In this document: positions 4,483 through 49,515 of the stretch, one piece after another
How positions within the stretch are numbered: the stretch's first letter is position 1
Layout: each line of letters begins with the position of its first letter
Origin: Macrostomum lignano
Taxonomy: Eukaryota
DNA: 64,000 nt
Reading direction: 5' to 3'
NCBI GenBank assembly: GCA_002269645.1
Contig: NIVC01001383.1
Location: 164,740-228,739, forward strand
Notes under the pieces: generated by a model
Told to the model about the DNA's origin: nothing
Databases searched by the model: none
The model's input: the letters and a program-made list of their open reading frames with translations, nothing else
Translations under genes and position numbers: made by a program

Positions 4483-7400
4483 CTGTGTGCAATGTTGTTA
4501 ATAGAGTTCGAATTGTGCGGCCGTAAGATTAATCTCTTCTCTCTATCTATCTATCTATATCTTAATACTAAAAGTGGTGCGATGTTTGTTTGTGTGTTGC
4601 AATTTTTCTCCTAAACTACTGGCAAGTCAGCGTTGAAACTTATATGGGAAAACTGCAAATTTTCCGGATTGGGTTTATAGCTATTTTAATCTTTCATTTT
4701 TACATTTCTTCTTTCTTCTTAATACTAAAGTTGGTGCGTTGTTTGTCTGTGTGTGTGTGTGTTTGTTGGATAACTCCTCCTAGAATACTTGCAAGTCAGC
4801 GTTGAAACTTATATGGGAAAACTGCAAATTTTCCGAGGATGGCTTTAGGCTATTTTAATCTTTCATTTTCAATTTTTAAGATCCCTAAAAAAGCAGAAAA
4901 TGGCGGTCTTGACCTTTGATAATCTTAATTGTCCCCTCTTTCTGCTTGGAGCTGAAAATTTGTATCAATTTTAGTGATTGCGCCATAAAATTTTTCTATC
5001 TTGGCAGTGTATTTTCTCTCAAGTGGGGGATGGTCGCGTTCTCAGTGGCTGCGTGTGTACACTTGAACCCTGGCTCACTGACTGACTTTATAGACAATTG
5101 CGCAACTATTTGTGTTCTGTTTTTTAACAGGAAGCCCTGTGTATTTTTTGCACAGTGAAATTCAGTGCATTTTAATGCATAAACTTGCGAGCATCTTTAG
5201 CAGGCAGTGAACGTACACTCGATATTTCAATGCTTAAAATCAGAAAGTTTCAAACACTAACTGTTGCTCGAGTTTTGAACTTAGAGAGGAGAGACTTATA
5301 TTGCTGGAAAGATCTTGCTGCGATGAGTTCGGGGATATAAGTTTTTTGCTTTAAATATGAAAATTAAATTCACAGCATTCAAGAAAAGATTTTCATACTT
5401 TAAGCTTTCTGCAAAGATTGTGCTCATTTTGGAGTTCAATGGGGGTTCGACCGACCCCCAATAGTTGGTGGGGGGGTTCAATTTCTAGCTGCACTGCGTA
5501 TTGGAAGGGGGTCGGTTGCTGTGTATTTGAGGGTTGATTTAGATTGCGCAATCTTTTTGTTAACTTTAACTGAGGCTGATACTGACTGCCTGAGAAATAA
5601 GTTGCGCAATTTAATTGGTTCAATGTTTTTACGGCGCCTTTCAACACGCAGCTGTCAACCCTAACCCTAACCCTAACCAATGAATTCTGAGAGCTGGGCT
5701 ATTTGACGTAGAAATTTCGATTTAGTCCAGTTTCACGGAGAGGATTTCTATTTCGCGGAGAATATTTTAATACTAAAGTTGGTGCGTTGTTTGTTTGTTT
5801 GTTTGTCTGTTTGTTTGTAGGATATCTCCTCCTAGACTACGTGCAACTCAGCGTTGAAACTTATATGGGAATACTGCAAATTTTCCGGAATCGGCTTTAG
5901 GCTGTTTTAATCTTTCATTTTTTAATTTTAAGATCCCTAAAAAAGCAGAAATCTGATTTCCTAACCTTCTCTGGACACTTTTTCTGCTCGGAGCTGAAAA
6001 TTTGCATAAATTTTGAGTGATTACGCCACAACTTTTTCCTATGTCGCCAGTGCATTTTCTCTCCTGTGGGGGAATGGGCGCGTTCTCATTGGCGGCGTGT
6101 GTACAATTGGACCCTGGCTCACTGGCTGACTTTATAGACAATTGCGCAACTATTTGTGTTCTGTTTTTTAACAGGAAGCCCTGTGTATTTTTTGCACAGT
6201 GAAATTCAGTGCATTTTAATGCATAAACTCGCGAGCATCTTTAGCAGGCAGTGAAGGTACACTCGATATTTCAATGCTTAAAATCAGAAAGTTTCAAACA
6301 CTAACTGTTGCTCGAGTTTTGAACTTAGAGAGGAGAGACTTATATTGCTGGAAAGATCTTGCTGCGATGAGTTCGGGGATATAAGTTTTTTGCTTTAAAT
6401 ATGAAAATTAAATTCACAGCATTCAAGAAAAGATTTTCATACTTTAAGCTTTCTGCAAAGATTGTGCTCATTTTGGAGTTCAATGGGGGTTCGACCGACC
6501 CCCCAATAGTTGGTGGGGGGGGGGTTCAATTTCTAGCTGCACTGCGTATTGGAAGGGGGGTCGGTTGCTGTGTATTTGAGGGTTGATTTAGATTGCGCAA
6601 TCTTTTTGTTAACTTTAACTGAGGCTGATACTGACTGCCTGAGAAATAAGTTGCGCAATTTAATTGGTTCAATGTTTTTACGGCGCCTTTCAACACGCAG
6701 CTGTGTGTAGCTCTAACCCTAACCCTAACCAATGAATTCTGAGAGCTGGGCTGTTTGACGTAGAAATTTCGATTTAGTCCAGTTTCACGGAGAGGATTTC
6801 TATTTCGCGGAGAATATTTCGATGGTGTTCAGTTTCACGGAGAGGATTTCGATAGTGTTCAGTTTCACGGAGACGATTTCTGTTGCGCGGAGAGGTGTTG
6901 GAAAATGGGATTCCGCTGATGGAGTTCAGGGAATGGAATTCCGCTGATTGGAGTTCTTCCCCTTTCTTCTCCGAAGGAGGAGTTGGCCTCGTTCTTAATA
7001 CTAAAAGTGGTGCGATGTTTGTTTGTGTGTTGCAATTTTTCTCCTAGACTACTGGCAAGTCAGCGTTGAAACTTATATGGGAAAACTGCAAATTTTCCGG
7101 ATTGGGTTTATAGCTATTTTACTCTTTCATTTTTACATTTTAAGATCCCTAAAAAAGCAGAAAACTGTTTTTTTAACCCTCAATAACCTTCTTTGGCCAC
7201 TCTGCCTGGGGCTGCAGCCAGTTTGTAAAAATAGCCACCCCAACCTCCGCCCGCGGGTCGCTGTGTTTTTGGGGGGGGGGTGAGTGCGCGTGTTCCGCGT
7301 TCAATGCAAACCCCCCCCCCGCGTGTTAGGGGTTCAATTAAATTTAACGATTCCCCCGGAATGGGGGGTTGGGCTTGGGCTGAGTGTACATAGAAGTTGT

Positions 7401-10400
7401 ACAGTGTAAGGAGATAGCTAGGACTGTGTCGAGATTTAATTGGTTTTATTATCGGCGCCATTCAATAGGCAGCCATGTGTATTTGCTGGGCAGTAAAATT
7501 CATTGAATAAACTTGCGAGCCTCTTTAGCAGGCAGTGAACGTACACTCGATACTTCAATGCTTTAAATCAGGAAATTTCAAACGCTAACTGTTCCTCAAG
7601 TTTTACACTTTCAGAGGAGAGACTTACATTGCTGGAAAGATCTTGCAACGCTGAGTTCGGGGATATAAGTTGTTTGCTTTAAATGTGAAAACAAAAAGCA
7701 CAGCATTTAAAAAACGATTTCCATACTTTTAACTTTCTGCAGTGTTACTCATTTTGGAGTTCAATGGGGGTTCGACCAACCCCCGAACAGTTGGTGGGAG
7801 GGGAGGGGCGGTTCAACTTTTAATTGCCACTGCGGAAGGGGGTCAGTCGCTGTGTATTGAAGGGTTGATTTAGTTTGCGCAATCTTTTTGTTAACTTTTA
7901 CCGAGACTGATACTGACTGACTGTGAAATCGGTTGCGCATTCAATGAATTTAATTGGTTCAATTTTTTATCGGCGCCTTTCAACACGCTGCTGCGTTGTA
8001 GCTCTAACCCTAACCCTAACCCTAACCACTAAATCCTGAGAGTTGATTCTTTTTGACGGAGAAAATTTCGATTCAGTCCAGTTTTAAGGAGAGAATTTCT
8101 GTTTCGCGGAGACGATTTTGATGGATGTCAGTTTCACGCAGAGGATTTCCATGAAGTCCAGTTTAACGGAGAGGATTTCTGTTTCTCGGAGAGGATATTG
8201 ATGAATGTCAGTTTCACGGAGAGGTTTTTGATGGAGTTATCTTTTACGGAGAGGATTTCGATGATGTTCAGTTTCGCGGAGAGGAGTTGGATGATGGGAT
8301 TCAGGGAATGGCATTTCAGGGAATGGAGTTCCGGTGATGGGAATTCTTCCCCTTTCTCCTCCAGAGGAGGAGTTGGCCTCGTCTTAATACTAAAAGTGGT
8401 GCGTTGTTTGTTTGTGTGTTGCAATTTTTCTCCTAGACTACTGGCAAGTCAGCGTTGAAACTTATATGGGAAAACTGCAAATTTTCCGGATTGGGTTTAT
8501 AGCAATTTTAATCTTTCATTTTTACATTTTAAGATCCCTAGAAAAGCAGAAAACTGTTTTTTTAACCCTCAATAACCTTCTTTGGCCACTCTGCCTGGGG
8601 CTGCAGCCAGTTTGTAAAAATAGCCACCCCAACCTCCGCCCGCGGGCCGCTGTGTATTGAGGGGTGGTGGGTGCGCGTGTTCCGCGTTCAATGCAAATAA
8701 CCCCCCGCGTGTTGGGGGGTTCAATTAAATTTAACGATTCCCCCGGAATGGGAGGGGGTTGGGCTTGGGCTGAGTGTACATAGCAGTTGTACAGTGTAAG
8801 GAGATAGCTAGGACTGTGTCGAGATTTAATTGGTTTTATTATCGGCGGCATTCAATAGGCAGCCATGTGTATTTGCTGGGCAGTAAAATTTAATGTATAA
8901 ACTTGCGAGCCTCTTTAGCAGGCTGTGAACGTACACTCGATACTTTAATGCTTTAAATCAGGAAATTTCAAGCGCTAACTGTTCCTCGAGTTTTAAACTT
9001 TCAGAAGAGAGACTTATATTACTGGAAAGATCTTGCAATACTGAGTTCGGGGATATAAGTTGTTTGCTTTAAATGTGAAAACAAAAAGCACAGCATTTAA
9101 AAAACGATTTCCATACTTTTAACTTTCGGCAGTGTACTCATTTTGGAGTTCAATGGGGGTTCGACCAACCCCCAAAAGTTGGTGGGAGGGGGGGTTCAAC
9201 TTTTAATTGCCACTGCGTATTGGAAGGGGGTCAGTCGCTGTGTATTGGAGGGTTGATTTAGTTTGCGCAATCTTTTTGTTAACTTTTACCGAGACTGATA
9301 CTGACTGACTGTGAAATCGGTTGCGCATTCAATTAATTCAATTGGTTCAACACGCTGCTGCGTTGTAGCTCTAACCCTAACCCTAACCCTAACCCTAACC
9401 ACTAAATCCTGAGAGTTGATTCTTTTTTACGGAGAAAATTTCGATTCAGTCCAGTTTAATGGAGAGAATTTCTGTTTCGCGGAGACGATTTTGATGGATG
9501 TCAGTTTCACGGAGAGGATTTCCATGGAGTCCAGTTTCACGGAGAGGATTTCTGTTTCTCGGAGGGGATTTTGATGAATGTCAGTTTCACGGAGAGGATT
9601 TCCATGGAGTCCAGTTTCACGGAGAGGATTTCTGTTTCTCGGAGGGGATTTTGATGAATGTCAGTTTCACGGAGAGGATTTCCATGGAGTCCAGTTTCAC
9701 GGAGAGGATTTCTATTTCTCGGAGGGGATTTTGATGAATGTCAGTTTCACGGAGAGGTGTTTGATGGAGTTCTCTTTTACGGAGAAGATTTCGATGATGT
9801 TCAGTTTCGCGGAGAGAAGTTGGATGATGGGATTCAGGGAATGGCATTTCAGGGAATGGAGTACCGGTGATGGGAATTCTTCCCCTTTCTCCTCCAGAGG
9901 AGGAGTTGGCCTCGTCTCTCTACATATACTAAAGTTCACGTGTTGTTTGTCTGTCTGTCTGTCATTTCGACAACTCCTCCTTGAATAGTGGCAACTCAGC
10001 GTTGAAACTTATATGGGAAGATTGGAAATTATCCGAGGTCGGCTATAGGCTATTTTAATTCTGAAATTTTCTACATATACTAAAGTTCACGTGTTGTTTG
10101 TCTGTCTGTCTGTCATTTCGACAACTCCTCCTTGAATAGTGGCAACTCAGCGTTGAAACTTATATGGGAAGATTTGAAATTATCCGAGGTCGGCTATAGG
10201 CTATTTTAATTCTGAAATTTTCTACATATACTAAAGTTCACGTGTTGTTTGTCTGTCTGTCTGTCATTTCGACAACTCCTCCTTGAATAGTGGCAACTCA
10301 GCGTTGAAACTTATATGGGAAGATTGGAAATTATCCGAGGTCGGCTATAGGCTATTTTAATTCTGAAATTTTAATTTCTAAAATCCTCAAAAAAGCAGAA

Positions 10401-13400
10401 AACTGCTTTTTTGACCCCCAATGACCTTCTTTTGCCACTCTGCCTGGGGCTTCAGCCAGTTTGTAAAAATAGCCACCCCAACCTCCGCCCGCGGGCCGCT
10501 GTGTATTGAGGGGTGGTGGGTGCGCGTGTTCTGCGTTCAATGCAAATAAAACCCCCCGCGAGTTGAGGGGTTGAGTTAAATTTAATGATTCCCCCGGAAC
10601 GGGGGGGTTGGGCTTGGACTGAGTGTACATAGCTGTTGTAAACAGATAGAACTGTGCCGAGATTCAATTGGTTTTATTATCGGCCCTGTGTATTAGCTGG
10701 GCAGTGAAATTCAATGAATAAACTTGCGAGCTTCTCTAGCAAGCAGTCGGGAAACCGGTAAATTTTAAACGCTAACTGTTCCTCGAGTTTTAAACTTTGA
10801 GAGGAGAAACTTATATTGCTGGAAAGATCTTGCAACGCTGAGTTCGGGGATATAAGTTGTTTGCTTTAAATATGAAAAGAGAAAGCACAGCATTTGAAAA
10901 AGTATTTCCATACTTTTAACTTTCTGCAAAAATTGTACTCAGTTTTGCGAGACGTAATAGATAAAGTTGGGGGAGGGTTTAACTTCTCACTGCTGCTGTG
11001 TATTGGAGGGTTGATTTAGATTGCGCAATGTTTTTGTTAACTTTAACTGAGACTGATACTGACTGACTGTGAAATCGGTTGCGCCATCAATTTGTTTTAT
11101 TATCTGTGCCTTTCAATAGGCTGCCCTGTGTAATAGCCGGCGTGTGTAATTAATGAATAAACTTGCGAGCCTCTTTGGCAGGCAGTGAACGTACACTCGA
11201 TATTTCAATGCTTTAAAACGGGAACTTTCAAATGCTAACTGCTCTTCGAGTTCTAAACTTTAAGAGAAGAGACTTATACTGCTGAAAAGATCTTGCAACG
11301 CTGAGTTCAAGGATATAAATTGTTTGCTTTAAATATAAAGACTAAAAGCACAGCATAAAAAAACTATTTCCATACTTTTAGCTTTCTGCAAAGATTGTAC
11401 TCATTTTTAGTTCAATGCCCCCAACAGTTGGGGGTTCAATTTCTAATTGCCACTGCGTATTGAAAAGGGGTCGGTCTCTGTGTACTGGAGGGTTGATTTA
11501 AATTGCGCAATCTTTTTGTTAACTTTAACTGAGACTGATACTGACTGACTGAGAAATCTGTTGCGCAATCAATTGATTCAATTGTTTCAATTTTTTTTAT
11601 TTGGACACGCAGCTGTGTGTAGCTCTAACCCTAACCCTAACCCTAACAATAACCCTAACCAGTGAATCATGATATTTTATTCTTTTTGACGGAGAAAATT
11701 TCGATTGAGTCCAGTTTTAAAGAGAGAATTTCGATGGTTATCAGTTTCACGGACAGGATTTCTGTTTCGCTGAGAGGATTTCGATGGTTTTCAGTTTTAC
11801 GGAGAGGATTTCGATGGTTTTCAGTTGCACAGACTGCTTCGCGGAGAGGATCTTGATGGATTTGGCATCTTCAATCAGTCAGAGAAGAGAGTAAAGAGAA
11901 GAATGAAAAGAGAAGAGAGATGAGATGATAGAAAACAGAGTAGAAATGAATGGAGAGATTAGACATGACAGATGGGAGACTTAGCTGCAGGGCTGTCCCG
12001 GGGGGACACAGCGGGAAGGCGCGAACACCCATTCCGCTAAACAGATGGGAGAGAAGAGGGGAGTAAGGCCGGAACAAAGGAGGGAGAAGAGAAGAGGAGA
12101 GAGGAGATGAGAGGGGAGAAATGAGATAACAGAGGGAGACAAGTTAAGAGAGGAAAGTAGTGCGGAGAGGAGAGATGAGAGATGCGATGAGAAGAGAGGA
12201 GTGAGAAATAAGAGAGAAGAGATTAGAGATTAGAAAAGAGAGGGAAGAAGATGAAAGGAGCAAGGAGAGGAGAAAAGAGAGAATGGAAAGGATAGAAAAG
12301 AGAGAAGAGAAGAGAAAGGGGATAGTGGAAAGGAGGAACGAAAGATAGGAGATAAGAAAGTAGAGGGTGAGAGCGTATATGAGATATGAGAAATGAGAGC
12401 AGAGAGGAGAGAAAAGAGAAGTGAGAGAGGTTTAAGGAGAGACGATAGATAAGTGAGTAGAGATGACATATGAGAGAGGAGAGAAGAGGGAGAGATATGA
12501 GGGAAGAGAGGAGACAAGAGACAGGAGAGGGTACAGACGAAAGACGAGGGAGAAGAGACAAATAAGGAGTGGGGGTAGAGATGAGATGAGAGAGAGGAGA
12601 GAGAAGAGAGTCACGATAATAGCGAATAGAAGAGAGAGGAGATATGAGAGACGTGAGAGTCTTTGAGCTATGGTCTTTCAAAGATTTTGTAAAGAATTTG
12701 GAGACGATTTGGAAGATGGGATTCAAGTGGAGTTTCAGCTGATGGATTTCAGGGAATGGAATTCCGGTGATGGGAGTTCTTCCCCTTTCTCCTCCGAAGG
12801 AGGAGTTCCACTCGTATATACTAAAAATGAGTTGTCTGTATGTGGGTAGGTATGCGATAGATTTCAGAAAAAATGGCTCAACCAATTTTCTTTAAACTTG
12901 CACCATTTGATCAGAAATTTTCCTGGGACGGTACATGCATCTTGGCTAAGAAATTGCTCAATTTTAAAGGGATTAAATATTCGAAAAACATGCTTTTTTG
13001 CAAAGGTCAAGCAGCTCTTTTGACCTGAAATGCATTGTAAGAATGCTAGAGAAAAAACTGACTGACTGAATTCCGATTGTGATAAAGATTGCATCACAAC
13101 AAGTTGAAAACAGTGCCGAAGAAATGCACACACGACTTGATTAAAATTGCGTAACCAATATTGCTAACTTGAACTGAGACTGATACTGGCTGACTGAGAA
13201 ATTGATTATGTCATAACTTTTTACCCCAATTGACTTGCTGTAAGAATTTAATTATAAGGGCCACAATTCATGTACTCCAATTGAAAAGAGATAGCCTAGA
13301 TCCGAACAGACTGGACTGCCAACGTAGCGACCTGGGTTCGAATCTTAGTAGTGCAAAATAATTTTTTTATAAAACACCTTGAAAACACGAAACTGCTAAA

Positions 13401-13409
13401 CATAAAAAA

Positions 13410-15010
13410 GCACAATGTCAAACATAAAAGAGGCACCATGTCAAACATTACATGGGCACCATGTAAAACAAATACGTGACTCTATGTCAAACATTAAAGA
13501 GCCACCATGTGAAACATTAAAGAGTCACCATTTCGAACATTAAAAAGCCACCACGTCGAACATTAAAGTGCCACCATGTCAAACGTAAAAGAGCCACCAT
13601 GAAGAACATTAAAGAGCCACCATGCCAAACATAAAAGAGCCACTATGTCGAACATTAAAGAGCTAGCATGTCAAACATTAAAGAGCCACCATGTCGAACA
13701 TTAAAGAGCCACCATTTCGAACATAAAAGAGCCGCCATGTAAAACATTAAAGAGCCACATTGTCAAACATAAAAGAGCCACCATGTAAGACATTTAAGAG
13801 CCATCATGTGAAACATTTAAGAGCCACCATGTCGAACATAAAAGAGCTACCATGTCAAACCTAAAAGAGCCACCATGTCAAACCTAAAAGAGCCACCATG
13901 TCGAACATAAAAGAGCTACCATGTCAAACCTAAAAGAGCCACCATGTCGAACATAAACGAACCTTTATGTCGTACATTAAAGAGCCACCATGTCAAACAT
14001 TAAAGAGCCACCATGTCAAACATAAAAGAGCCACAATGTCAAACATAGAAGAGCCACAATGTCAGATATTAAAAAGCCACCGTATCAAACATAAAAGAGT
14101 TACCATGTAGAACAAAAAAGAGCCACCATGTCAAACATTAAAGAGCCACCATGTCGAACATTAAAGAGCCACCATGTCAAGCATAAAAGAGCCACCATGT
14201 CAAACATTAAAGAGCCATGTCAAACACTAAAGAGCCAACATGTCGAACATAAAAGAGCCACCATGTCAAACATTAAAGAGCCACCATGTCAGACATTAAA
14301 GAGCCACCATGTCAAACATTAAAGAGCCACCATATCGAACACTAAAGAGCCACCATGTCAAACATATGTGACTCCATGTCGAATATATACGTGCCTCCAT
14401 GTCACACATAAAAGGGCCACCATGTAAAACATATACATATGACTACATAACAAACATTAAACAGCCCACCATGTCGAACATTAAAGAGCCATCATGTCAA
14501 ACATAAAAGAGCCACCATGTCAAACATTAAAGAGCCACCATGTCAGACATTAAAGAGCCACTATGTCAAACATAAAAGAGCCACCATGTCAAACATTAAA
14601 GAGCCACCATATCGAACACTAAAGAGCCACCATGTCAAACATATGTGACTCCATGTCAAATATATACGTGACTCCATGTCACACATAAAAGAGCCACCAT
14701 GTAAAACATATACATATGACTACATAACAAACATTAAACAGCCACCATGTCGAACATTAAAGAGCCATCATGTCAAACATAAAAGAGCCACCATGTCAAA
14801 CATTAAAGAGCCACCATGTCAAACATTAAAGAGCCACATGTCGAACATAAAAGAGCCACTTTGTCAAACATCTACGAGTCACCATGTCAAGCGTATACAT
14901 GACTCCATTTCAGACATTAAAGTGCCACCATGTCAAACATAAAAGAGCCACCAGCTCAAACATTAAAGAGCCACCATGTCAGACACAAAACAGCTACCAT
15001 GTCAAACATA
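13410..15010. repeat. 23-bp satellite AAAGAGCCACCATGTCAAACAT(T/A), roughly 65-70 copies
   Basis: Period 23 (13981 to 14004), diverged copies. Confidence 0.95.
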
Positions 15011-15012
15011 AA

Positions 15013-15570
15013 TGGGGTGCCTACTATCTTGGAGTGCTTGCTATCTGGAGATGCGTGCTATCTGGGGGTGCTTGCTATCTGGGGGGATGCTTGCTATCTT
15101 GGGGGTTCTAGCTATCTGGGGGTGCTTGCTATTAGGTGGATGCTTGCTATCTGGGGTGCCTGCTATCTTGGAGTGCTTGCTATCTGGAGATGCGTGCTAT
15201 CTGGGGGTGCTTGCTATCTGGGGGTGCTTGCTATCTGGGGGTGCTTGCTATCTGGGGGTGCTTGCTATCTGGGGGTGCTTGCTATTAGGTGGATGCTTGC
15301 TATTAGGTGGATGCTTGCTATCTGGGGGTGCTTGCTATTAGGTGGATGCTTGCTATCTGGGGGTGCTTGCTATCTAAGGGTGCTTGCTATTAGGTGGATG
15401 CTTGCTATCTGGGGTGCCTGCTATCTGGGGGTGCTTGCTATCTGGAGATGCTTGCCTTGCTATCCAAGGGTGCTTGCTATCTGGGGATGCTTGCTATCTA
15501 AGGGTGCTTGCTATTAGGTGGATGCTTGCTATCTGGGGGTGCTTGCTATCTGGGGGGTTGCTTGCTGTCC
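15013..15570. repeat. About 17-bp satellite GGGGGTGCTTGCTATCT, about 30 copies
   Basis: Read directly; abuts the 23-bp satellite. Confidence 0.95.
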
Positions 15571-20767: not shown

Positions 20768-20838
<71 letters not shown>

Positions 20839-30876: not shown

Positions 30877-31038
30877 CAGGGGCGTAGCCAGGAATTTCCT
30901 ACGGAGGGATACACCAAGGTAAAAGTGCTATGCAGAGTCACGTGGTAGCATGTATAGCAACAAAGGGCAACAAAAAAGTTTTGGTCAGGCTCTTCGGGGG
31001 GATACATCCCCCCTAACTCCCCCATCCCTACGCCCCTG
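30877..31038. mobile_element. Small MITE-like element with 11-bp TIRs (CAGGGGCGTAG...CTACGCCCCTG)
   Basis: Perfect inverted termini at 30877-30887 and 31028-31038. No clean TSD identified, so the superfamily is unassigned. Confidence 0.6.
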
Positions 31039-32146: not shown

Positions 32147-32578
32147 ATGGCTCATCACACAACACAATCCGGCAGCAACCTGGAGAAATTCGACAAGCAG
32201 AAGAAAGCCATGGAGCAGCACTTCAATACATTCTTAAGATTGACATCGGAAATAATTCAGGAGGACCACGAGACACTACAACACGAATCGAAGAGCAAGG
32301 CATCACTCGCCGAAGTCGTGGCTGAGCAAAGGCAGCAACTGGACGACTACAAGAAGCGACTGACAGACACCGAGGCTGAGCTGGAGCGCAAGAAGAGAGA
32401 GTGCGAGCGACTGGAAGCCCTGGTGCAAGAGCAGGAGCAAGTTCTGTTCGCAACCGTCGAGCTCAATTTGGAACCACCAGCCAAGCGACCCCACAGCCAG
32501 GACGAGCCCGACAAGAGCGATACCCTGGCTGAGGAGTCTGCGGCGGCGCCCAAGGAGGACCCGGCTGCGGCGAACTGA
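32147..32578 (+). CDS. Orphan 143-aa coiled-coil protein carried within the composite Helitron
   Basis: ATG-to-stop ORF with GC-rich, exon-like codon usage inside AT-rich flanks. Heptad-like E/K/R/Q-rich helix LAEVVAEQRQQLDDYKKRLTDTEAELERKKRECERLEALVQEQ and an NLS-like PPAKRP. No family recognised. Confidence 0.6.
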   Translation: MAHHTTQSGSNLEKFDKQKKAMEQHFNTFLRLTSEIIQEDHETLQHESKSKASLAEVVAEQRQQLDDYKKRLTDTEAELERKKRECERLEALVQEQEQVLFATVELNLEPPAKRPHSQDEPDKSDTLAEESAAAPKEDPAAAN

Positions 32579-38500: not shown

Positions 38501-41500
38501 CTCTGCTGCAGGCAGTGAACGTACACTCGATATTTCAATGCTTTAAATCAGAAAGTTTCAAACGCTAACTGTTGCTCGATTTTTGAACTTTGAGAGACGA
38601 GACTTTTATTGCTGGAAAGAGCTTGCAGCGCTGAGTTCGGGGATATAAGTTGTTTGCTTTAAATATGATAATAACTAAAAATACAGCATTCAAAAAACGA
38701 TTTCCATACTTTTGCAAAGATTGTACTTATTTTTGCGACAGGTCAGAGATAAAGTTGGGGGGTTCAACGTCTACTTGCCACTGCGTATTGGAAGGGGGGC
38801 GGTCACTGTGTATTGGATGGTTGATTTAAATTGCGCAATCATTTTGTTAACTTGAACTCAGACTGATACTGACTTATTGAGAAATCGATTGCGCAATCTG
38901 TTGCTTCAATTAGTTCAATTTTTTATTATCGCTGCCTTTCAACACGCAGCTGTGTGTAGCTCTAACCCTAACCCTAACCCTAGCCACTGAATCCTGAGAG
39001 TTGAGTTCTGTCTGACGAAGTAAATTTCGATTGAGTCCAGTTTCACGGAGAGGACTTTTTGTCCTCGGAGAGGACTTGGATGATGGAACTCGGGTCATGG
39101 AATTCAGCTAATGAAGTTCAGGGAATTGAATTCTGGTGATGGGAGTTCTTCCAATGGGAGAGAAAAGAGAGTAGATATGAGAGAGGAGAGATTAGAGATG
39201 ACATACGGGAGAGAATAGGAGAGTAAGGCGAGAATGAAGAGGGAGAGAGAAGCAAAAGGAGAAGAGAGTGAGGAGAGAGGAGAAAGATGAAAGATCAGAG
39301 ATAAGAGAGTGTAGAGAGGAAAGTAGTGTGGAGAGGAGAGATGAGAGATGCGATGAGAAGAGATGAGTGAGAACATAAGAGAGAAGAGATCAGAGATTAG
39401 AGAAGAGAGGGGAGAACATGAAAGGAGCAAGGAGAGGAGAAAAGAGAGAATGGAGAGAATAGAAAAGAGAGAAGAGAAGAGACAGGGGATAGTGGAAAGG
39501 AGGAAAGAAAGATGAGAGACAAGAAAGTAGAGCTTGAGAGCGTAAATGAGATATGAGAAATGAGAGCAGAGAGGAGAGAAAAGAGAAGAGAGAGAGAGGG
39601 TTAAGAGAGACAATAGATAAGTGAGTAGAGATGACATATGAGAGAGGAGAGAAGAGGGAGAGATAAGAGAGAAGAGAGGAGACAGGAGACAGAAAAGAAG
39701 AGGAGGGATGCGAGAAGAGAGGAGACAAGAGACAGGAGAAGGTACAGACGAAAGACAAGGGAGAAGAGATAAATGAGGGAGTAGGGGTAGTGATGAGATG
39801 ATAGAGAGGAGAGAGAAGAGAGTCACGATAATAGCGAAGAGAGGAGAGAGGAGATATGAGAGACGTGAGAGTCTTTGAGCTATGGTCTTTGAAACGTTTT
39901 GTAAAGAATTTGGAGACGATTTGGAATATAGGGTTCAAGGCATGGAATTTCAGTTGATGGATATTTCAGGGAATGGAATTCCGGTGATGGGATTTCTTCC
40001 TCTATCTCCTCCAGAGGAGGAGTTCCACTTCTTTAATACTAAAGTTGGTGCGTTGTTTGTCTGTGTGTGTGTGTGTTTGTTGGATAACTCCTCCTAGAAT
40101 ACTTGCAAGTCAGCGTTGAAACTTATGTGGGAAAACTGCAAATTTTCCGAGGATGGCTTTAGGCTATTTTAATCTTTTATTTTTACATTTTAAGATCCCT
40201 AAAAAAGCAGAAAATGGCGGTCTTGACCTTTGATAATCTTAATTGTCCCCTCTTTCTGCTTGGAGCTGAAAATTTGCATCAATTTTAGTGATTGCGCCAT
40301 AAAATTTTTCTATCTTGGCAGTGTATTTTCTCTCAAGTGGGGGGATGGTCGCGTTCTCAGTGGCTGCGTGTGTACACTTGAACCCTGGCTCACTGACTGA
40401 CTTTATAGACAATTGCGCAACTATTTGTGTTCTGTTTTTTAACAGGAAGCCCTGTGTACCACCTAGAATACTTGCAAGTCAGCGTTGAAACTTATGTGGG
40501 AAAACTGCAAATTTTCCGAGGATGGCTTTAGGCTATTTTAATCTTTTATTTTTACATTTTAAGATCCCTAAAAAAGCAGAAAATGGCGGTCTTGACCTTT
40601 GATAATCTTAATTGTCCCCTCTTTCTGCTTGGAGCTGAAAATTTGCATCAATTTTAGTGATTGCGCCATAAAATTTTTCTATCTTGGCAGTGTATTTTCT
40701 CTCAAGTGGGGGGATGGTCGCGTTCTCAGTGGCTGCGTGTGTACACTTGAACCCTGGCTCACTGACTGACTTTATAGACAATTGCGCAACTATTTGTGTT
40801 CTGTTTTTTAACAGGAAGCCCTGTGTATTTTTTGCACAGTGAAATTCAGTGCATTTTAATGCATAAACTTGCGAGCATCTTTAGCAGGCAGTGAACGTAC
40901 ACTCGATATTTCAATGCTTAAAATCAGAAAGTTTCAAACACTAACTGTTGCTCGAGTTTTGAACTTAGAGAGGAGAGACTTATATTGCTGGAAAGATCTT
41001 GCTGCAATGAGTTCGGGGATATAAGTTTTTTGCTTTAAATATGAAAATTAAATTCACAGCATTCAAGAAAAGATTTTCATACTTTTAGCTTTCTGCAAAG
41101 ATTGTGCTCATTTTGGAGTTCAATGGGGGTTCGACCGACCCCCCAATAGTTGGTGGGGGGAGTTCAATTTCTAGCTGCACTGCGTATTGGAAGGGGGGTC
41201 GGTTGCTGTGTATTTGAGGGTTGATTTAGATTGCGCAATCTTTTTGTTAACTTTAACTGAGGCTGATACTGACTGCCTGAGAAATAAGTTGCGCAATTTA
41301 ATTGGTTCAATGTTTTTACGGCGCCTTTCAACACGCAGCTGTCAACCCTAACCCTAACCCTAACCAATGAATTCTGAGAGCTGGGCTATTTGACGTAGAA
41401 ATTTCGATTTAGTCCAGTTTCACGGAGAGGATTTCTATTTCGCGGAGAATATTTCGATGGTGTTCAGTTTCACGGAGAGGATTTCGATAGTGTTCAGTTT

Positions 41501-44500
41501 CACGGAGACGATTTCTGTTGCGCGGAGAGGTGTTGGAAAATGGGATTCCGCTTATGGAGTTCAGGGAATGGAATTCCGCTGATTGGAGTTCTTCCCCTTT
41601 CTTCTCCGAAGGAGGAGTTGGCCTCGTATATACTAAAGTTGGTGCGATGTTTGTGTGTTTGTTTGTCTGTTGCATAACTCCTCCTAGAATACTTGCAACT
41701 CAGCGTTGAAACTTATATTGGAAAACTGCAAATTTTCCGAGGATGGCTTTAGGCTATTTTAATCTTTCATTTTTACATTTTAAGATCCCTAAAAAAGCAG
41801 AAAACGGCGGTTTTGACCTTTGATAATCTTAATTGTACCCTCTTTCTGCTTGGAGCTGAAAATTTGCATGAATTTTGAGCGATTGCGCCATAACTTTCTC
41901 CTATCTCTGCAGTGTATTTTCTCTCCAGTGGGGGGATGGTCGCGTTCTCAGTGGCTGCGTGTGTACAATCGGACCCTAGCTCACTGGCTGATTGTATAGA
42001 CAATTGCGCAACGATATGTGTTCTGATTTTCAATAGGCTGCCCTGTGTAGTTTTGGACAGTGAAATTCAATGAATAAACTTGCGAGCCTCCCACTGCTGC
42101 AGGCAGTGAACGTACACTCGATATTTCAATGCTTTAAATCAGAAAATTTCAAATGCTAACTGTTGCTCGATTTTTTAACTTTGAGAGGAGAGACTTATAT
42201 TGCTGGAAAGAGTTTGTAGCGTTGAGTTCAGGGATATAGGTTTTTTGCTTTAAATATGAAAACTAAAAGCACAGCATTCAAAAACGATTTAAATACTTTT
42301 GCAAAGATTGTACTTATTTTTGCGATAGGTCAGAGATAAAGTTGGGGGGGTTCAACTTCTACTTGCCACTGCGTATTGGAAGGGGTCGGTTGCTGTGTAT
42401 TTGAGGGTTGATTTAGATTGCGCAATCTTTTTGTTAACTTTAACTGAGGCTGATACTGACTGCCTGAGAAATAAGTTGCGCAATTTAATTGGTTCAATGT
42501 TTTTACGGCGCCTTTCAACACGCAGCTGTCAACCCTAACCCTAACCCTAACCAATGAATTCTGAGAGCTGGGCTATTTGACGTAGAAATTTCGATTTAGT
42601 CCAGTTTCACGGAGAGGATTTCTATTTCGCGGAGAATATTTCGATGGTGTTCAGTTTCACGGAGAGGATTTCGATAGTGTTCAGTTTCACGGAGACGATT
42701 TCTGTTGCGCGGAGAGGTGTTGGAAAATGGGATTCCGCTTATGGAGTTCAGGGAATGGAATTCCGCTGATTGGAGTTCTTCCCCTTTCTTCTCCGAAGGA
42801 GGAGTTGGCCTCGTATATACTAAAGTTGGTGCGATGTTTGTGTGTTTGTTTGTCTGTTGCATAACTCCTCCTAGAATACTTGCAACTCAGCGTTGAAACT
42901 TATATTGGAAAACTGCAAATTTTCCGAGGATGGCTTTAGGCTATTTTAATCTTTCATTTTTACATTTTAAGATCCCTAAAAAAGCAGAAAACGGCGGTTT
43001 TGACCTTTGATAATCTTAATTGTACCCTCTTTCTGCTTGGAGCTGAAAATTTGCATGAATTTTGAGCGATTGCGCCATAACTTTCTCCTATCTCTGCAGT
43101 GTATTTTCTCTCCAGTGGGGGGATGGTCGCGTTCTCAGTGGCTGCGTGTGTACAATCGGACCCTAGCTCACTGGCTGATTGTATAGACAATTGCGCAACG
43201 ATATGTGTTCTGATTTTCAATAGGCTGCCCTGTGTAGTTTTGGACAGTGAAATTCAATGAATAAACTTGCGAGCCTCCCACTGCTGCAGGCAGTGAACGT
43301 ACACTCGATATTTCAATGCTTTAAATCAGAAAATTTCAAATGCTAACTGTTGCTCGATTTTTTAACTTTGAGAGGAGAGACTTATATTGCTGGAAAGAGT
43401 TTGTAGCGTTGAGTTCAGGGATATAGGTTTTTTGCTTTAAATATGAAAACTAAAAGCACAGCATTCAAAAACGATTTAAATACTTTTGCAAAGATTGTAC
43501 TTATTTTTGCGATAGGTCAGAGATAAAGTTGGGGGGGTTCAACTTCTACTTGCCACTGCGTATTGGAAGGGGGCGGTGGCTGTGTATTGGATGGTTGATT
43601 TAAATTGCGCAATCATTTTGCTAACTTGAACTGAGACTGATACTGGCTGACTGAGAAATCGATTGCTCAATCTGTTGCTTCAATTAGTTCAATTTTTTAT
43701 TATTGGTGCCTTTCAACACGCAGCTGTGTGTAGCTCTAACCCTAACCCTAACCCTAGCCACTGAATCCTGAGAGTTGAGTTCTGTTTGACGGAGAAAATT
43801 TCGATTGAGTCCAGTTTCACGGAGAGGATCTTTTTGTCTTCGGAGAGGAGTTGGATGATGCAACTCGGGTTATGGAATTCAGCTAATGGAGTCCAGGAAA
43901 TCGAATTCCGGTGATGGGAATTCTTCCGATGCGAGAGAAAAGAGAAAAGAGAACAGAGAAAAGAGATTATAGAAAAGAGAGTAGATATGAGAGAGGAGAG
44001 ATTAGAGATTAGAGAAGAGAGGGGAGAAGATGAAAGGAGCAAGGAGAGGAGAGAAGAGAGAATGAAGAGGATAGAAAAGAGAGAAGAGAAGAGACGGGGA
44101 TAGTGGAAAGGAGGAAAGAAAGATGGGAGACAAGAAAGTAGAGTCTGAGAGCGTATATGAGATATGAGAAATGAGAGCAGAGAGGAGAGAAAAGAGAAGA
44201 GAGAGGGTTAAGAGAGACGATAGATAAGTGAGTAGAGATGACATATGAGAGAGGAGAGAAGAGGGAGAGATAAGAGAGAAGAGAGGAGACAGGAGACAGA
44301 AGTGAAGAGGAGAGATATGAGAGAAGAGAGGAGACAAGAGATAGGAGAGGGTACAGACGAAAGACGAGGGAGAAGAGATACATAAGGGAGTAGAGATAAG
44401 AGGAGAGAGAGGAGAGACTAGATATAAGATAGCAAAGAAGAGAGAGCAGAGATGAGAGACTAGAGATGGAAAGCAGATTAGAGAGAAGAGATAAGAGACT

Positions 44501-47500
44501 ACACTGTAGAGATGAGAGGGCAAAGAGGAGGGCAAAAAGGCTTTACAGAGGATTTGGAGATGATTTGGAAGATGGGATTCAAGTCATGGAGTTTCAGCTG
44601 ATTGATTTCAGGGAATGGAATTCCGGTGATGGGAGTTCTTCCCCTTTCTCCTCCGGAGGAGGAGTTCCACTCGTTATATCTAAAGCTGAGTGGATCGATC
44701 GACCGGCCGGGTTTAACGCGTATCTCCTCCTAAACGGCTGGCAACTCAAATGCGGGACTTATATATATCAATGCAGAATTTTCCTACGCAACAAATAGGC
44801 TATTTTAATGTTGAAATTTTCAAAATTAAGTCTGTTAAAAAAGCAGAAAACTGTTTTCTTAACCTTCTTTGGCCACATTGCCTCTCCAGTGGAGGGGTAG
44901 TGGCATAATTGTAAAAACAACCACCCCAACCTCCTCCCGCGGGTCGCTGTGTTTTGGAGGGGTGGGTGACGCGTGTTCTGGGTTCAATGCTAATAAAACC
45001 CCCGCGTGTTGGGGGTGCAGTAAAATTTAATGATTCCCCCGGAATAGGGGGGGGGTTGGTTTGGGCTGAGTGTACATAGCAATGTACTGTGTAAACAGAT
45101 AGATAAGGACTGTGTCGAGATTCAATTGGTTTTATTATCGGCGTCTTTCAAAAGGCTGTGTATTAGCTGGGCAGCTAAATTCAATGAATAAACTTGCGAG
45201 CGGGAAGTTCAAACGCCAACTGTTCCTTGAGTTTTAAGCTTTGAGAGGAGAGAATTTGTATTGCTGGAAAGATCTTGCAACGCTGAGTTTGGGGATATAA
45301 GTTATTTGTTTTAAATATGAAAACAAAAAGCACAGCATTGAAAAAACGATTTCCATACTTTTAAACTTTCTGCCAAGATTGTAGTTGGGGGGGGGGAAGG
45401 TTGCGTACACAAATTCAAGCCAGCTATCATTTGAGTAATTTCAGTAATGGAGGAGGCGGGTGATAAATTTCAATTGGTTTGATTATCGGCGCTTTCAGTC
45501 CGTCAGATAAGAGAGTAGAGAGAAGAGATTTCAAGGAGAAGAGAGGATAGAAAGATGATAGAAAAGACAGTAGATATGAGAGCTGTGAGATTAAAGACGA
45601 GTCGACGACAGAGGGGAGAGAAGAGGGGAGTGAGGCGGGAATGATGAAGAGGGAGAGCGAAGAGAAGAGAATGTAGAGGGAAAAAAGGAGGGGAGAGAGG
45701 AAAAATGAGAGAGCAAAGGAGGCAGGAAAGATGGGAGGAGAGAGAGGGATAAGAGAGTACAGAGGAGAGAGAAGAGAGAAGAGAGATGAGACAGGAGACG
45801 GTAGAGAGGAGAGGGGAAAGATGAGAGATGAAAAAGGAGAGGGTAAGAGAGAAAATAGGAGTATGAGAAATGAGAGCAGAGAGAAAAGAGAAGAGAGAGA
45901 GAGGGCAGGGTAGAGGAGAGGCGATAGATAAGCGAGTAGAGATGAGAGATGGAAGAGAAGAGGAGAGATAAGAGAGAATTGAGAGAAGACAGGAGAGAAG
46001 ACGGGAGAGAGAGAAGCGAGAAGAGAAGAGAGAGAGGACTCAGGAGAGAGATGAGAAAAGAAATGAGAGAGCAAAGGGGAAAGATGAGAGAATAGAGATA
46101 AGAAAAAAGAGATAAGAGCGCAGAGAGGAGAGATGAGAGATGGGAGGTGATTGATAAGAAAGTAAGAGTAGAGATGAGAGAGGAGATGAGAGCAGAGAGA
46201 AGAGATTAGATAAAGGAGCAAAGAGGAGAGAGGAGACAGGAGAGAGTCTCAGTCTGGACCTGGCAGTCAATTTTTGCGAACAGGGAAAACATGCTATGAT
46301 ATTTCAGAGGTTTTATGGAGGATTATTTAAATTTTTTGACGTACACCCAGACAAGTAAAAAGCATATTTTATAGACTTCAGTTTCATAGTCTTGAGTGAC
46401 TGAACTTTGATAGAGATAATATTCTTTTAATTGATGGATTGTAGCTTGAAGGAGATGATACACGCTGGATTGCATTTAACGGAGATGATTTTGATGATAT
46501 CTGTTTCATAGAGAGGATGAAATGGCTAAATGAAAGGGAATAGAGAAAAGAGAAAAGGAAAGAGTGGATAAAAGATTAGATGAAAGAGAACATGAAAAGA
46601 GAGAATCAAAAGGGACAGATTAGAGAAAAGAAAAAGAGAATAAAGGCGAGAGAAGAGATGAGGGAATTGAGAGGAGAGAGGAGAGGGGGTAAGAGAGGAG
46701 AAAGAGGAGACTGGAGGGAGTAGAGCCAAAAGACGAGAGAGAAGAGATAAAAGAGTAAAGATGAGGGGAGAGAGGAGAGAGAAGCGAGAGTATAAGGGAG
46801 AGAGGAGAGGGGAGAAAGTAGAAAGATGAGAGAGCAGAGAGGAGAGTGAAGAGATAAAAGAGAAGAGAGGAAAAAGTAGAGGAGAAAGAAGAGAGTAGAT
46901 ATGAGAGTGCAGAAAGGAGAGATAAGAGAGTAGAGATGAGAGATAAGAGATGAGATGAGAAATGATTGATAAACGAGCAGATGAGAGCAGAGAGGAGATA
47001 GGAGAGATTAGAGATGAGAGAGCAAAGAGGAGAGAGGGACAGACGAGAGTCTCAATCTGGACAATGGCAGTCAATTTTTGCAAACAGGTAAAACAACATG
47101 ATATTTGGGGGTTAATAGAGGATTTGGAGAGGATTTGGACGATGGGATTCGTGTCATTGGATTCAGCTGATGGATTTCAGGGAATGAAATTCTGGCGATG
47201 GGAGTTCTATCCCCATACTCCGCCAACGGAGGAGTTGGCCTCGTTTATTTATATACTCGTAAGAGACTGCACATCGCTAATAGGATTTTGGAATGCCATT
47301 CTCATCCGTCAGACAAGTCAAATCTGTCTGACCTATGTTCGATGTTGAATTACACGCTAGGCTGTCTTAGTGTCCGTCAATCTGTGTGTCTGTTTGTCTG
47401 TCTGTCTGTCTGTCTGGCTGCCTGTCTGTCTGTCACTCTGTCTGTCTGTCTAGCGCGCATTAGTTTGATTAGCCACCCATTTTGAAAAGCACTGGACACA

Positions 47501-48654: not shown

Positions 48655-48774
48655 GAGACAGACAGACACTAAGACTAAGACAAGACACTAAGACAGACAT
48701 TAAGACAGACACTAAGACTAAGACAAGACACTAAGACAGACACTAAGACAGACAGACAGACAAAACAGAGAGGC

Positions 48775-48830
<56 letters not shown>

Positions 48831-48887
48831 TGACTGACTTACTGACAGAAAGACAGACAGACAGACAGACAGACAAAACAGAGAGGC

Positions 48888-48935
<48 letters not shown>

Positions 48936-49514: not shown

Positions 49515-49515
49515 T

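What the first reader, a model, noticed from the sequence alone, without database searches (positions are those of the whole stretch)
4533..47243. 42.7-kb head-to-tail Helitron concatemer with direct 3'-end to 5'-end junctions
Seen: 14 same-orientation units in which each 3' terminus directly abuts the next 5' motif with no host DNA between. Examples: CTCG|TCTTAATACT (8381), CTCG|TCTCTCTACATATACT (9914), CTAG|TCTCTATACT (15711), CTCG|TCTATCTATCTATATATACT (21268), CTCG|TATATACT (12814, 35642, 41626, 42813). Only the leftmost start has the canonical preceding A (A|TC 4532/4533). Established: Helitrons insert between A and T, make circular intermediates with end-to-start junctions, and can form tandem arrays. 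Inference: these joins look like rolling-circle or circle junctions. Because neighbours differ in subtype and even family, either elements target each other's termini or mixed concatemers are copied as a block. This would make it a self-growing Helitron 'train' with one coding engine.
Basis: partly seen in the sequence, partly recalled or inferred. Interest (0 to 1): 0.85.

Follow-up and report, generated by a model that had tools for sequence, protein, structure and literature searches.

The report
Head-to-tail Helitron transposon array, flatworm
A 42.7-kb stretch of a flatworm (Macrostomum lignano) genome is a real chain of 14 rolling-circle transposons (Helitrons) joined tail to head in one orientation; this kind of array is already known from bats, plants and fungi, but here it mixes different subfamilies and appears to be the family's usual arrangement.

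Summary
Window 4533-47243 holds 14 Helitron 3' ends, each a hairpin plus CTCG (one is CTAG), all on the + strand. Thirteen are followed within 2-15 nt by a 5' end, made of a T-rich leader plus ATACTAAAG. The window is Macrostomum lignano. One unit encodes a RepHel protein collinear with Helraiser (E 1e-214), and one unit belongs to a second Helitron family.

Four other M. lignano contigs show the same arrangement. Over all loci, 26 of 28 3' ends abut a 5' end, and no solo copy was seen.

The 'rolling-circle train' reading is only partly supported. Neighbouring units differ, so this is not one concatemer. At least one unit is a perfect 1187-bp tandem duplication. The coding unit has lost its own 3' end through a roughly 500-bp deletion. 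No multi-unit block is shared between loci at uniform identity.

The most likely history is precise joining by the transposase at or next to resident termini, followed by unequal recombination, duplication and deletion. Targeted insertion, multimer integration and recombination could not be separated with the data available. Head-to-tail Helitron junctions and arrays are already described, so this is a new member of a known kind and of moderate interest.

The parts
4533..4721 (+). U1a: 5'-only stub (32-nt TC/TCTA leader plus 157 nt of a 5' module), left edge of the array, preceded by host A
   Evidence: first 157 nt nearly identical to the start of U2
4722..5769 (+). U1b: unit lacking its last ~170 nt, 98-99.7% identical to U11
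5770..6991 (+). U1c: non-autonomous unit ending in a hairpin+TTGGCCTCG 3' end
6992..8381 (+). U2: non-autonomous unit; an older tandem duplicate of U3 (89-96% identity)
8382..9914 (+). U3: non-autonomous unit
9915..12814 (+). U4: non-autonomous unit whose 151-bp 5' module is present three times (9919-10372, 99% identity)
12815..15711 (+). U5: unit of a second Helitron family. It has a CTAG end, a GCCCCC/GGGGGGC hairpin, a 23-bp x70 satellite and a 17-bp x32 satellite. Only its first 11 nt (TATATACTAAA) are shared with family 1
   Evidence: the satellite and 3' end match L002 11932-13212, next to a 54%-identical helicase gene
15712..18490 (+). U6: non-autonomous unit
18491..21268 (+). U7: non-autonomous unit
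21269..33630 (+). U8a: RepHel-encoding (autonomous-type) Helitron whose own 3' terminus is missing
   Evidence: 99.2% identical to L010 and 98.1% to L011
22494..28908 (+). RepHel coding region: 8 open blocks separated by short stop-containing spacers (probable introns). Motifs present are HUH (LPHVHALLW), YVVKY and Walker A (GGTGKT). The N-terminus carries a 69-bp x9 coding repeat
   Evidence: L011 carries an annotated 1468-aa gene model
32147..32578 (+). 143-aa ORF downstream of RepHel, identical in two other copies and kept (as 122 aa) in a RepHel-deleted derivative; function unknown
33631..35642 (+). U8b: unit lacking its first ~260 nt, fused to U8a by a ~500-bp deletion across a former junction; it supplies the 3' end at 35642
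   Evidence: compared with L010 11484-11984
35643..37965 (+). U9: non-autonomous unit; its 3' end is followed by a repeated TCTCG
37966..40030 (+). U10: a 13-nt 5' stub, then a 50-nt T/C-rich leader, then a full unit; the 3' end lacks the final CG
40031..41626 (+). U11: non-autonomous unit with an internal 369-bp x2 duplication (100% identity)
41627..42813 (+). U12: a hybrid unit created by a perfect tandem duplication (41195-42385 equals 42382-43572)
42814..44673 (+). U13: non-autonomous unit
44674..47243 (+). U14: the most diverged unit (74-85% to the others), with a mismatched hairpin; right edge of the array
47244..47258 (+). Possible further 5' stub (TTTATTTATATACT) before unrelated DNA
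   Evidence: reading of the sequence only

Best explanation
What it is (shown): a genuine head-to-tail array of Helitron units in one orientation in Macrostomum lignano. It holds twelve non-autonomous family-1 units, one RepHel-encoding copy and one unit of a second family. It sits about 40 nt from an exon of a minus-strand FN3-repeat gene. This arrangement is the normal state of the family: 26 of 28 3' ends in five loci abut a 5' end.

How it most likely arises (inferred), in two layers:
1. The Helitron transposase joins the 3' end of one element directly to the 5' end of another, using the same chemistry that makes the Helraiser circle junction. The nick it makes at a resident element's terminus, at an existing 3'|5' junction, or at A|T sites in the (TCTA)n/TA leader just upstream of a 5' end serves as the integration site. 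Elements of different subfamilies, and even a second family, therefore accrete in one orientation with no host DNA between them.
2. Because all units share conserved ends, the array is then reshaped by unequal homologous recombination, tandem duplication, microsatellite slippage in the leaders, and deletions across junctions. This second layer is shown for specific units.
For: Identity as a Helitron:
- Rep and helicase match Helraiser at E 1e-214 and are collinear over residues 161-1476.
- The HUH, YxxxY and Walker A motifs are present.
- A 7-bp hairpin lies 9 nt from the end, and there are no TIRs.

Organism: 99-100% identity to an M. lignano UniRef protein.

Array is real and non-random: 13 of 14 3' ends are followed by the 5' core (P about 3e-25), with 0 minus-strand motifs.

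Recurrence: L001 has 4 junctions, L010 and L011 one each, and L012 seven. They lie on different contigs and have different unit orders.

Heterologous precise joins that homology cannot make:
- The family-2 3' end CTAG directly abuts a family-1 leader at 15711|15712.
- Family 2 shares only 11 nt with family 1 at its 5' side.

Nearly identical ends with different partners:
- The 3' ends of U1c and U11 differ by 0.8%, but the next 5' ends differ by 23%.
- The 3' ends of U4 and L001-c differ by 1.2%, but they are followed by family 2 in one case and family 1 in the other.

Layer 2 events:
- 1191 nt are identical at offset 1187, which makes U12 a hybrid of U13's 5' part and U11's 3' part.
- A 151-bp x3 repeat and a 369-bp x2 repeat.
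- A two-unit, 5.4-kb repeat in L012.
- A ~500-bp deletion across the junction after the coding unit.
- The leader series (TCTA)0-3+TAT.

Literature:
- The Helraiser circle junction joins CTAG directly to TC, and the transposase cleaves that plus-strand junction precisely (PMC5876387).
- Maize HelA elements prefer to insert near or inside other Helitrons (PMC3288121).
- A Helitron inserted 2 bp from another's 5' end, and a tandem triple, are reported in fungi (PMC5148889).
Against: - No empty site or polymorphic junction was available, so no single integration event was seen directly.
- Tracts of 100% identity between loci do not stop exactly at junctions. They fade from about 300 nt before the 3' end, or within about 50-200 nt after it. 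Recombination hot spots in the conserved termini would give the same picture.
- Mantel tests show moderate association both within units (r 0.45, p 0.012) and across junctions (r 0.35, p 0.02 in the subset; r 0.10, p 0.22 with all junctions). They do not favour unit-wise inheritance.
- Nine of 26 leaders are just TAT, without the canonical TC.
- A join between G and T is not the canonical A|T target.
- The loci were reached through Helitron genes, so the absence of solo copies may be a sampling effect.
Confidence: 0.5

Rival explanations
1. Satellite-type evolution after one or a few founding dimers. A single head-to-tail dimer arose once. Everything else is unequal crossing-over, gene conversion with dispersed copies, and segmental duplication (including the recent genome duplication of M. 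lignano), with no continuing targeting by the transposase.
For: - Perfect 1187-bp tandem duplicate.
- Two-unit 5.4-kb repeat in L012.
- Units are mosaic, with breakpoints near the conserved ends.
- Junction-spanning segments of ~600 nt are shared between loci at 96%.
- Identity decays gradually across junctions.
- Association across junctions is significant in the subset test.
Against: - It cannot create the family-2|family-1 join, where there is no homology.
- It cannot place 98-99% identical coding copies into arrays at three or four different loci with different neighbours.
- No higher-order periodicity is seen in the window.
Confidence: 0.22
2. Rolling-circle multimers. Circles replicate for more than one round and integrate as ready-made concatemers. 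Today's heterogeneity comes from age, gene conversion and template switching between circles.
For: - The junction form equals the circle junction (PMC5876387).
- Orientation is strictly uniform.
- 5'-only stubs occur at the right edge and inside the array, as expected for an unfinished last round.
- In L011 the coding copy is followed by a 5' end of its own type.
- The literature explains plant arrays this way (PMC11934779; PMC5148889).
Against: - Neighbouring units are structurally different (1.2-14 kb, different internal content) and 75-96% alike.
- A second family sits inside the array.
- The only identical neighbours have duplication breakpoints inside units, not at termini.
Confidence: 0.15
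3. Weak CTCG terminators are read through, so several units are excised and re-inserted together as one composite Helitron driven by the single coding copy.
For: - The family-1 3' end is CTCG rather than CTRR.
- Maize Helitrons with multiple termini carry damaged internal 3' ends (PMC3288121).
- The array as a whole is flanked by A and T.
- The coding unit must use a neighbour's 3' end.
Against: - No block of two or more units is shared between loci at uniform high identity. The unit order differs in every locus.
- CTCG is also the outermost end of arrays (47243; L001 11392), so it does terminate.
Confidence: 0.08
4. Assembly artefact: a repeat that was expanded or chimerically joined by the assembler.
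For: - Two related copies lie at contig ends (L010, L011).
- One 1.19-kb duplicate and one 369-bp duplicate are 100% identical.
Against: - Most units are diverged and structurally distinct, which assemblers do not invent.
- The same architecture appears on four other contigs of GCA_002269645.1.
Confidence: 0.03

Closest known systems
[quoted passage not shown]
   Same: Same-orientation units with the 3' end directly abutting the next 5' end. Truncated units and multiple termini occur. The arrays are read as a signature of rolling-circle transposition.
   Different: As far as the papers I could read describe them, those arrays consist of one family or of truncated copies of one element. Here neighbours belong to different subfamilies. 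A second family and a 12-kb coding copy are included, and the arrangement seems to be the rule for the family. The two primary papers were not readable here.
Helraiser circle junction (Grabundzija et al. 2016, 2018; PMC5876387)
   Same: The 3' tetranucleotide is joined directly to the 5' T(C) with no extra bases, on the plus strand. The RepHel here is collinear with Helraiser. The 5' ends are alike: TCCTATATAATAAAAG in Helraiser (from memory) against (TCTA)nTATATACTAAAG here.
   Different: These joins are chromosomal and connect different elements. The 3' end is CTCG, not CTAG. The leader before the 5' core varies from 2 to 15 nt.
Maize Helitrons with multiple termini, and the preference to insert near or inside other Helitrons (PMC3288121, citing Yang & Bennetzen 2009 and Du et al. 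2009)
   Same: Clusters of termini in one element, with nested or adjacent insertion proposed as the cause.
   Different: In maize the internal 3' ends are mostly damaged (CTAT) and host or captured DNA lies between termini. Here the internal ends are intact and abut directly.
Fusarium and Metarhizium Helitrons (PMC5148889)
   Same: One element was found inserted 2 bp from another's 5' end. Three copies were found in tandem. The first 73 nt of the 5' end were found repeated. The authors state the same two explanations (insertion into a 5' end, or rolling-circle replication).
   Different: Those are Helitron2-type elements with asymmetric TIRs and occur as isolated cases. This is a Helitron1-type family with arrays of 7-14 or more units.
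Helitron-derived satellites (Drosophila DINE-TR1, Hydractinia HSymSHlR, oyster Helentron repeats; PMC11934779, PMC7492417)
   Same: Helitron sequence amplified in tandem by local processes.
   Different: Those repeat an internal segment or a short monomer. Here each repeat unit is a whole element with both termini.

Membership tests
Canonical Helitron (Helitron1) | RepHel protein: HUH/two-tyrosine Rep domain fused to a PIF1-type helicase | tested here: met
   The conceptual protein from 23916-28905 matches Helraiser 7lcc at E 1.3e-214 and is collinear over residues 161-1476. The motifs LPHVHALLW, YVVKY and GGTGKT are present. A 98%-identical copy has an annotated 1468-aa gene model.
Canonical Helitron (Helitron1) | 5' terminus TC | tested here: inconclusive
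   10 of 26 leaders start with TC, 9 are TAT and 7 are other T-initial variants. The leader behaves as a (TCTA)n microsatellite, so the true first base cannot be fixed.
Canonical Helitron (Helitron1) | 3' terminus CTRR | tested here: not met
   Family 1 ends in CTCG in every intact copy, including the array-terminal ones. Only the family-2 unit ends in CTAG. This is a terminal-sequence variant; all other features fit.
Canonical Helitron (Helitron1) | Short GC-rich hairpin about 10-12 nt before the 3' end | tested here: met
   Family 1 has a 7-bp stem with a 3-nt loop, 9 nt from the end. Family 2 has a 6-bp stem 12 nt from the end. Folding energies are -7.9 to -9.2 kcal/mol, but z-scores against shuffles are only -1.4 to -2.1.
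Canonical Helitron (Helitron1) | Insertion between A and T without target-site duplication | tested here: inconclusive
   The array is flanked by A (4532) and T (47244), and the L001 array ends CTCG|T. No empty site was obtainable. A 7-bp repeat, CGTAAGA, lies near both edges and may be chance.
Helitron2 / Helentron | Asymmetric terminal inverted repeats; endonuclease domain after the helicase (Helentron) | tested here: not met
   No reverse-complement match of 8 nt or more was found between the first 40 nt and the last 150 nt of any unit. The protein match ends at Helraiser residue 1476 of 1496, and no further domain-sized ORF follows.
Rolling-circle concatemer of one element | Neighbouring units identical or nearly so at formation, with unit boundaries at the termini | tested here: not met
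   Neighbours are 75-96% alike and differ in length and content. The one identical pair has its breakpoints inside units.
Rolling-circle concatemer of one element | Precise 3'-to-5' junction, with a last unit truncated at its 3' side | tested here: inconclusive
   The junctions are direct. A 15-nt stub resembling a 5' end follows the last 3' end, but it is too short to be certain.
Tandem repeat shaped by unequal crossing-over | Hybrid units and block duplications with arbitrary register | tested here: met
   U12 combines U13's 5' part and U11's 3' part, with 1191 nt identical. There are 151-bp x3 and 369-bp x2 repeats. L012 carries a two-unit repeat. This accounts for part of the array, not for the heterologous joins.

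The most novel reading that the evidence does not exclude
In this flatworm a Helitron1-type transposase integrates new copies preferentially at the termini of resident copies: at the 3'|5' junction itself, or at A|T sites of the (TCTA)n leader next to a 5' end. It does so across subfamilies and families. Helitrons therefore build self-extending, single-orientation arrays as their main mode of accumulation. That would be a site-specific, terminus-homing form of Helitron integration, which has been proposed but never demonstrated.
Probability: 0.35. Interest if true: 0.65.

Novelty: new member of a known kind. Interest (0 to 1): 0.4.

Why it matters
How Helitrons choose targets and how their tandem arrays arise are still argued from data mining. 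The two standing explanations are rolling-circle multimers and insertion next to each other.

This family offers many young, heterogeneous junctions. Its coding copies are 98-99% identical at several loci. The host is a laboratory animal with several inbred lines and close sister species. Polymorphic arrays could therefore show directly where a new unit enters.

There are practical consequences too. Such arrays break assemblies, since two related copies sit at contig ends. They inflate gene counts with spurious stop-free ORFs on the pyrimidine-rich strand. Here the array also lies about 40 nt from an exon of a host gene.

If the arrays turn out to be only recombination products, the finding is an ordinary repeat cluster.

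Tried and rejected
1. Searching for paralogous or allelic copies of the flanking FN3 gene to find an empty site. The protein search returned nothing at E<=1e-20. The index seems to hold only proteins under about 500 aa, since every hit was that short.
2. An exact-product look-up of six other window ORFs found nothing: 28171-28908, 22494-23390, 46962-47348, 34729-35382 and 14930-15517. Only the 143-aa ORF worked.
3. A scan of metagenome contigs for the 3'-end motif gave 0 hits.
4. Mantel tests of whether ends are inherited with their unit or with their junction partner gave moderate signal for both, so they were not decisive.
5. A test for block copying across the junction after the coding copy in L010, L011 and L012. 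The 100% identity tract ends about 300 nt before the 3' end, and similarity then declines gradually. This neither supports nor excludes co-inheritance.
6. L012 units 1-2337 and 5427-7761 are about 100% identical up to the junction, but identity continues 40 nt past it and then fades. The boundary cannot be pinned to the terminus.
7. The idea that L012's join (a unit with a U4-like interior followed by a U6-like unit) is the empty site for the family-2 unit was rejected. The upstream unit's 3' half is not U4-like.
8. Helentron/Helitron2 classification was rejected.
9. Pritham & Feschotte 2007 could not be read, so comparison with the bat arrays rests on how other papers cite it.
10. The 143-aa ORF has no significant match to solved structures.

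Full report
SOURCE AND NATURE OF THE WINDOW. The window is eukaryotic. The Rep-domain ORF 25405-26223 is 99% identical to a UniRef protein of the flatworm Macrostomum lignano, and the helicase ORF is 100% identical to the same entry over the shared part. Related loci were all recovered from the M. lignano assembly GCA_002269645.1.

OBSERVATION CHECK.
- The typical 3' end is ...TTCCCCTTTCTCCTCC-GAA/AGA-GGAGGAG-TTCCACTCG or -TTGGCCTCG. This is a 7-bp hairpin placed 9 nt from the terminus.
- One unit ends differently, in GCCCCC-ATCG-GGGGGC-GAAGATTGCTAG (15711).
- There are 14 such ends between 6991 and 47243, all on the + strand and none on the minus strand.
- Thirteen are followed by a 5' end after 2-15 nt of T/C/A leader. 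The 5' end has the core ATACTAAAG, then a (TGTC)n microsatellite, then a conserved ~150-nt module.
- Given the density of the core motif inside the region, chance would give this with P of about 3e-25.
- A self-comparison shows only direct repeats, at 72-100% identity.
- The array starts after host ...GATTAA (A at 4532) and ends CTCG|TTTATTTATATACTCG....

ANATOMY.
- The coding unit. It starts at 21269 and carries eight open blocks (22494-28908) separated by short stop-containing spacers. Concatenated, they align collinearly with the Helraiser transposase (PDB 7lcc) over residues 161-1476, at E 1.3e-214. The HUH motif (LPHVHALLW, split from ...EYQKRG by a spacer), the two tyrosines (YVVKY) and Walker A (GGTGKT) are all present. 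A 98%-identical copy on another contig has an annotated 1468-aa gene model. The protein ends where Helraiser ends, and no unit has terminal inverted repeats. This is therefore a Helitron1-type element, not a Helentron or Helitron2.
- The 3' tetranucleotide. It is CTCG rather than CTRR in all family-1 copies.
- Unit 5 (12815-15711). It belongs to another family. Its 23-bp satellite and 3' end match the region downstream of a helicase gene that is only 54% identical (L002 11932-13212, ending CTAG|TCTAG...). It shares just TATATACTAAA with family 1 at the 5' side.
- Additional 5'-only pieces. A 189-nt stub lies at the left edge. A 1048-nt unit lacks its last ~170 nt. The 151-bp 5' module of unit 4 is present three times. 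A 13-nt stub lies at 37966. In three cases the new 5' end follows a T-run inside the truncated predecessor.

RECURRENCE.
- L001 has four direct junctions and an array end CTCG|TTG.
- L010 and L011 carry coding copies 99.2% and 98.1% identical to the window's. Each is followed directly by another unit and lies at a contig end.
- L012 is 20.4 kb of uninterrupted array with seven junctions. It includes a RepHel-deleted derivative.
- Over all loci, 26 of 28 3' ends abut a 5' end. The other two are array edges, and no solo element was seen.
- The unit order differs in every locus.
- The leaders form a series: TAT (nine times), TCTATAT, TCTATCTATAT and TCTATCTATCTATAT. That is (TCTA)n+TAT, plus variants. 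Such leaders contain internal A|TC sites.

HOW THE ARRAY WAS BUILT: WHAT IS SHOWN.
(a) Local duplication. Positions 41195-42385 are identical to 42382-43572 (1191 nt at offset 1187). 'Unit 12' is therefore a hybrid of the 5' part of unit 13 and the 3' part of unit 11, as expected from unequal crossing-over or a simple tandem duplication. Units 2 and 3 are an older pair of the same kind. The 151-bp x3 and 369-bp x2 repeats are further local events. L012 carries a two-unit, 5.4-kb repeat.
(b) Deletion. Compared with L010 and L011, the window's coding copy stops at 33630. About 237 nt of its 3' end and about 262 nt of the next unit are missing. The copy is thus fused to its neighbour and has no terminus of its own.
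(c) Mosaicism. 300-nt windows of one unit find their best matches (95-100%) in different units and different loci.
(d) Heterologous precise joins. The family-2 CTAG end abuts a family-1 leader where no homology exists. Nearly identical ends also have unrelated partners. The 3' ends of units 1c and 11 differ by 0.8%, while the following 5' ends differ by 23%.

WHAT COULD NOT BE SETTLED. I tested whether ends are inherited with their own unit (transposition of units) or with their junction partner (duplication of blocks). Both associations are moderate. Within units r is 0.45 (p 0.012). Across junctions r is 0.35 (p 0.02) in a cleaned subset and 0.10 (p 0.22) with all junctions. Tracts of 100% identity between loci fade near junctions but not exactly at them. 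Recombination concentrated in the conserved termini would give the same result. No block of two or more units is shared between loci at uniform identity.

MECHANISM.
- Established facts. Helraiser circles join CTAG directly to TC. The transposase makes and re-cleaves that plus-strand junction precisely (PMC5876387).
- Inference. The same cleavage at a resident element's end or junction, or canonical A|T cleavage inside the AT-rich (TCTA)n leader, supplies the integration site. Incoming elements therefore end up tail to head and in one orientation.
- What this explains. It accounts for the mixed subfamilies, the second family, the coding copies sitting in arrays at several loci, and the uniform orientation. 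Unequal recombination, slippage and deletion then remodel the array.
- Weighting. I put about 0.5 on this two-layer account. I put about 0.22 on recombination alone after rare founding dimers, and about 0.15 on integration of rolling-circle multimers.

COMPARISON WITH WHAT IS KNOWN.
- Head-to-tail junctions and tandem Helitron arrays are reported from bat and plant genomes, and are used as support for rolling-circle transposition (PMC5876387 introduction; PMC5148889; PMC11934779; PMC12001565).
- Insertion near or inside other Helitrons, and elements with multiple termini, are described in maize (PMC3288121).
- Repeated 5' ends, an insertion 2 bp from another element's 5' end, and a tandem triple are described in fungi. 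The authors offer the same two explanations (PMC5148889).
- Nothing on Helitron arrays in M. lignano was found.
- The features that stand out here are the heterogeneity of neighbours, the inclusion of a second family and of coding copies, and the near absence of non-arrayed ends in the sequence sampled.
- I file it as a new member of a known kind and give it moderate interest (0.4).

LIMITS. The loci were reached through Helitron genes, so the census is not unbiased. No reads, no empty sites and no second assembly of this locus were available. The key primary paper on bat arrays was not readable. Helraiser's 5' sequence, maize excision footprints and the FNDC3-like assignment of the upstream exon are from memory and were not tested.

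Noticed in passing
window 288-1040, 1519-2391, 4055-4492 (minus strand); possibly 50698-51486: A host gene with fibronectin type III repeats lies on the minus strand; its matches include FNDC3A domains and titin. The array's left edge is about 40 nt from the 4055-4492 exon. If 50698-51486 is an upstream exon of the same gene (my recollection of the FNDC3 N-terminus, with no database hit), the whole array sits antisense in a ~46-kb intron.
   Followed up: partly
window 4522-4528 and 47259-47265: The 7-bp sequence CGTAAGA occurs just outside both edges of the array (…GGCCGTAAGATTAA|TC… and …TATATACTCGTAAGAGACT…). It could be chance (roughly a few percent) or could mean the true outer boundaries differ from A|TC … CTCG|T.
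   Followed up: no
window 47244-49873: Right of the array there is a TATATACT stub, a (TGTC)n tract at 47385-47450, and a 1.1-kb (AGAC)277 microsatellite (48734-47847 region, i.e. 48734-49847). On the minus strand at 49866 there is TATACT…TCTGTGTTTGTCTGTC, which resembles a Helitron 5' end pointing leftwards. This may be a remnant of an oppositely oriented element with an expanded microsatellite.
   Followed up: no
window 22625-23254: A 69-bp x9.1 in-frame tandem repeat encodes a 23-aa unit (AEDRAAEGEAERQHRLEQDRLRT) at the RepHel N-terminus. The alignment offsets suggest the window has about three more repeats than copy L010.
   Followed up: partly
window 32147-32578; L010, L011, L012 at 10001-10432: A 143-aa ORF rich in charged residues lies downstream of RepHel. 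It is identical in two other copies, is annotated as a gene in the NCBI assembly, and is retained (as 122 aa) in a derivative that has lost RepHel. It has no significant match to solved structures. It could be an accessory gene or a captured fragment.
   Followed up: partly
window 53173-53601: An ORF fragment related to piggyBac-type transposases (piggyBat, E 1.9e-12).
   Followed up: partly
window 50376-50650: A 35-bp x7.9 minisatellite (96% matches) just beside the ORF at 50698-51486.
   Followed up: no
3' halves of units, e.g. window 20156-21175, 36902-37867, 39104-39826 (minus strand): The 3' halves of the units are strongly purine-rich on the + strand (GC skew up to 0.5). The minus strand therefore carries 170-340-aa stop-free ORFs of Ser/Leu-rich low complexity. 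These are almost certainly not genes but could be called as such.
   Followed up: no
window 37952-37970: After the 3' end …TTGGCCTCG comes TCTCG and then a 13-nt 5' stub. The repeated T+CTCG looks like a unit reduced to its first base and last four bases, possibly an excision or deletion footprint.
   Followed up: no
L002 13212-13240; L001 11454-12134: In L002 the family-2 coding Helitron ends CTAG|TCTAGATAACTAAC…, which faintly resembles another Helitron 5' end. In L001 the array is followed by a gene with a DNA polymerase B (DNA_pol_B_2) hit, possibly from a Polinton-like element.
   Followed up: no
L003-L009 (Logan assemblies SRR19430222, SRR316283xx/SRR316284xx): Helitron copies with 52-61% identical helicases, from unidentified sequencing runs. 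One carries an ORF with a faint RPA/OB-fold hit after the helicase. They show no family-1 termini.
   Followed up: no
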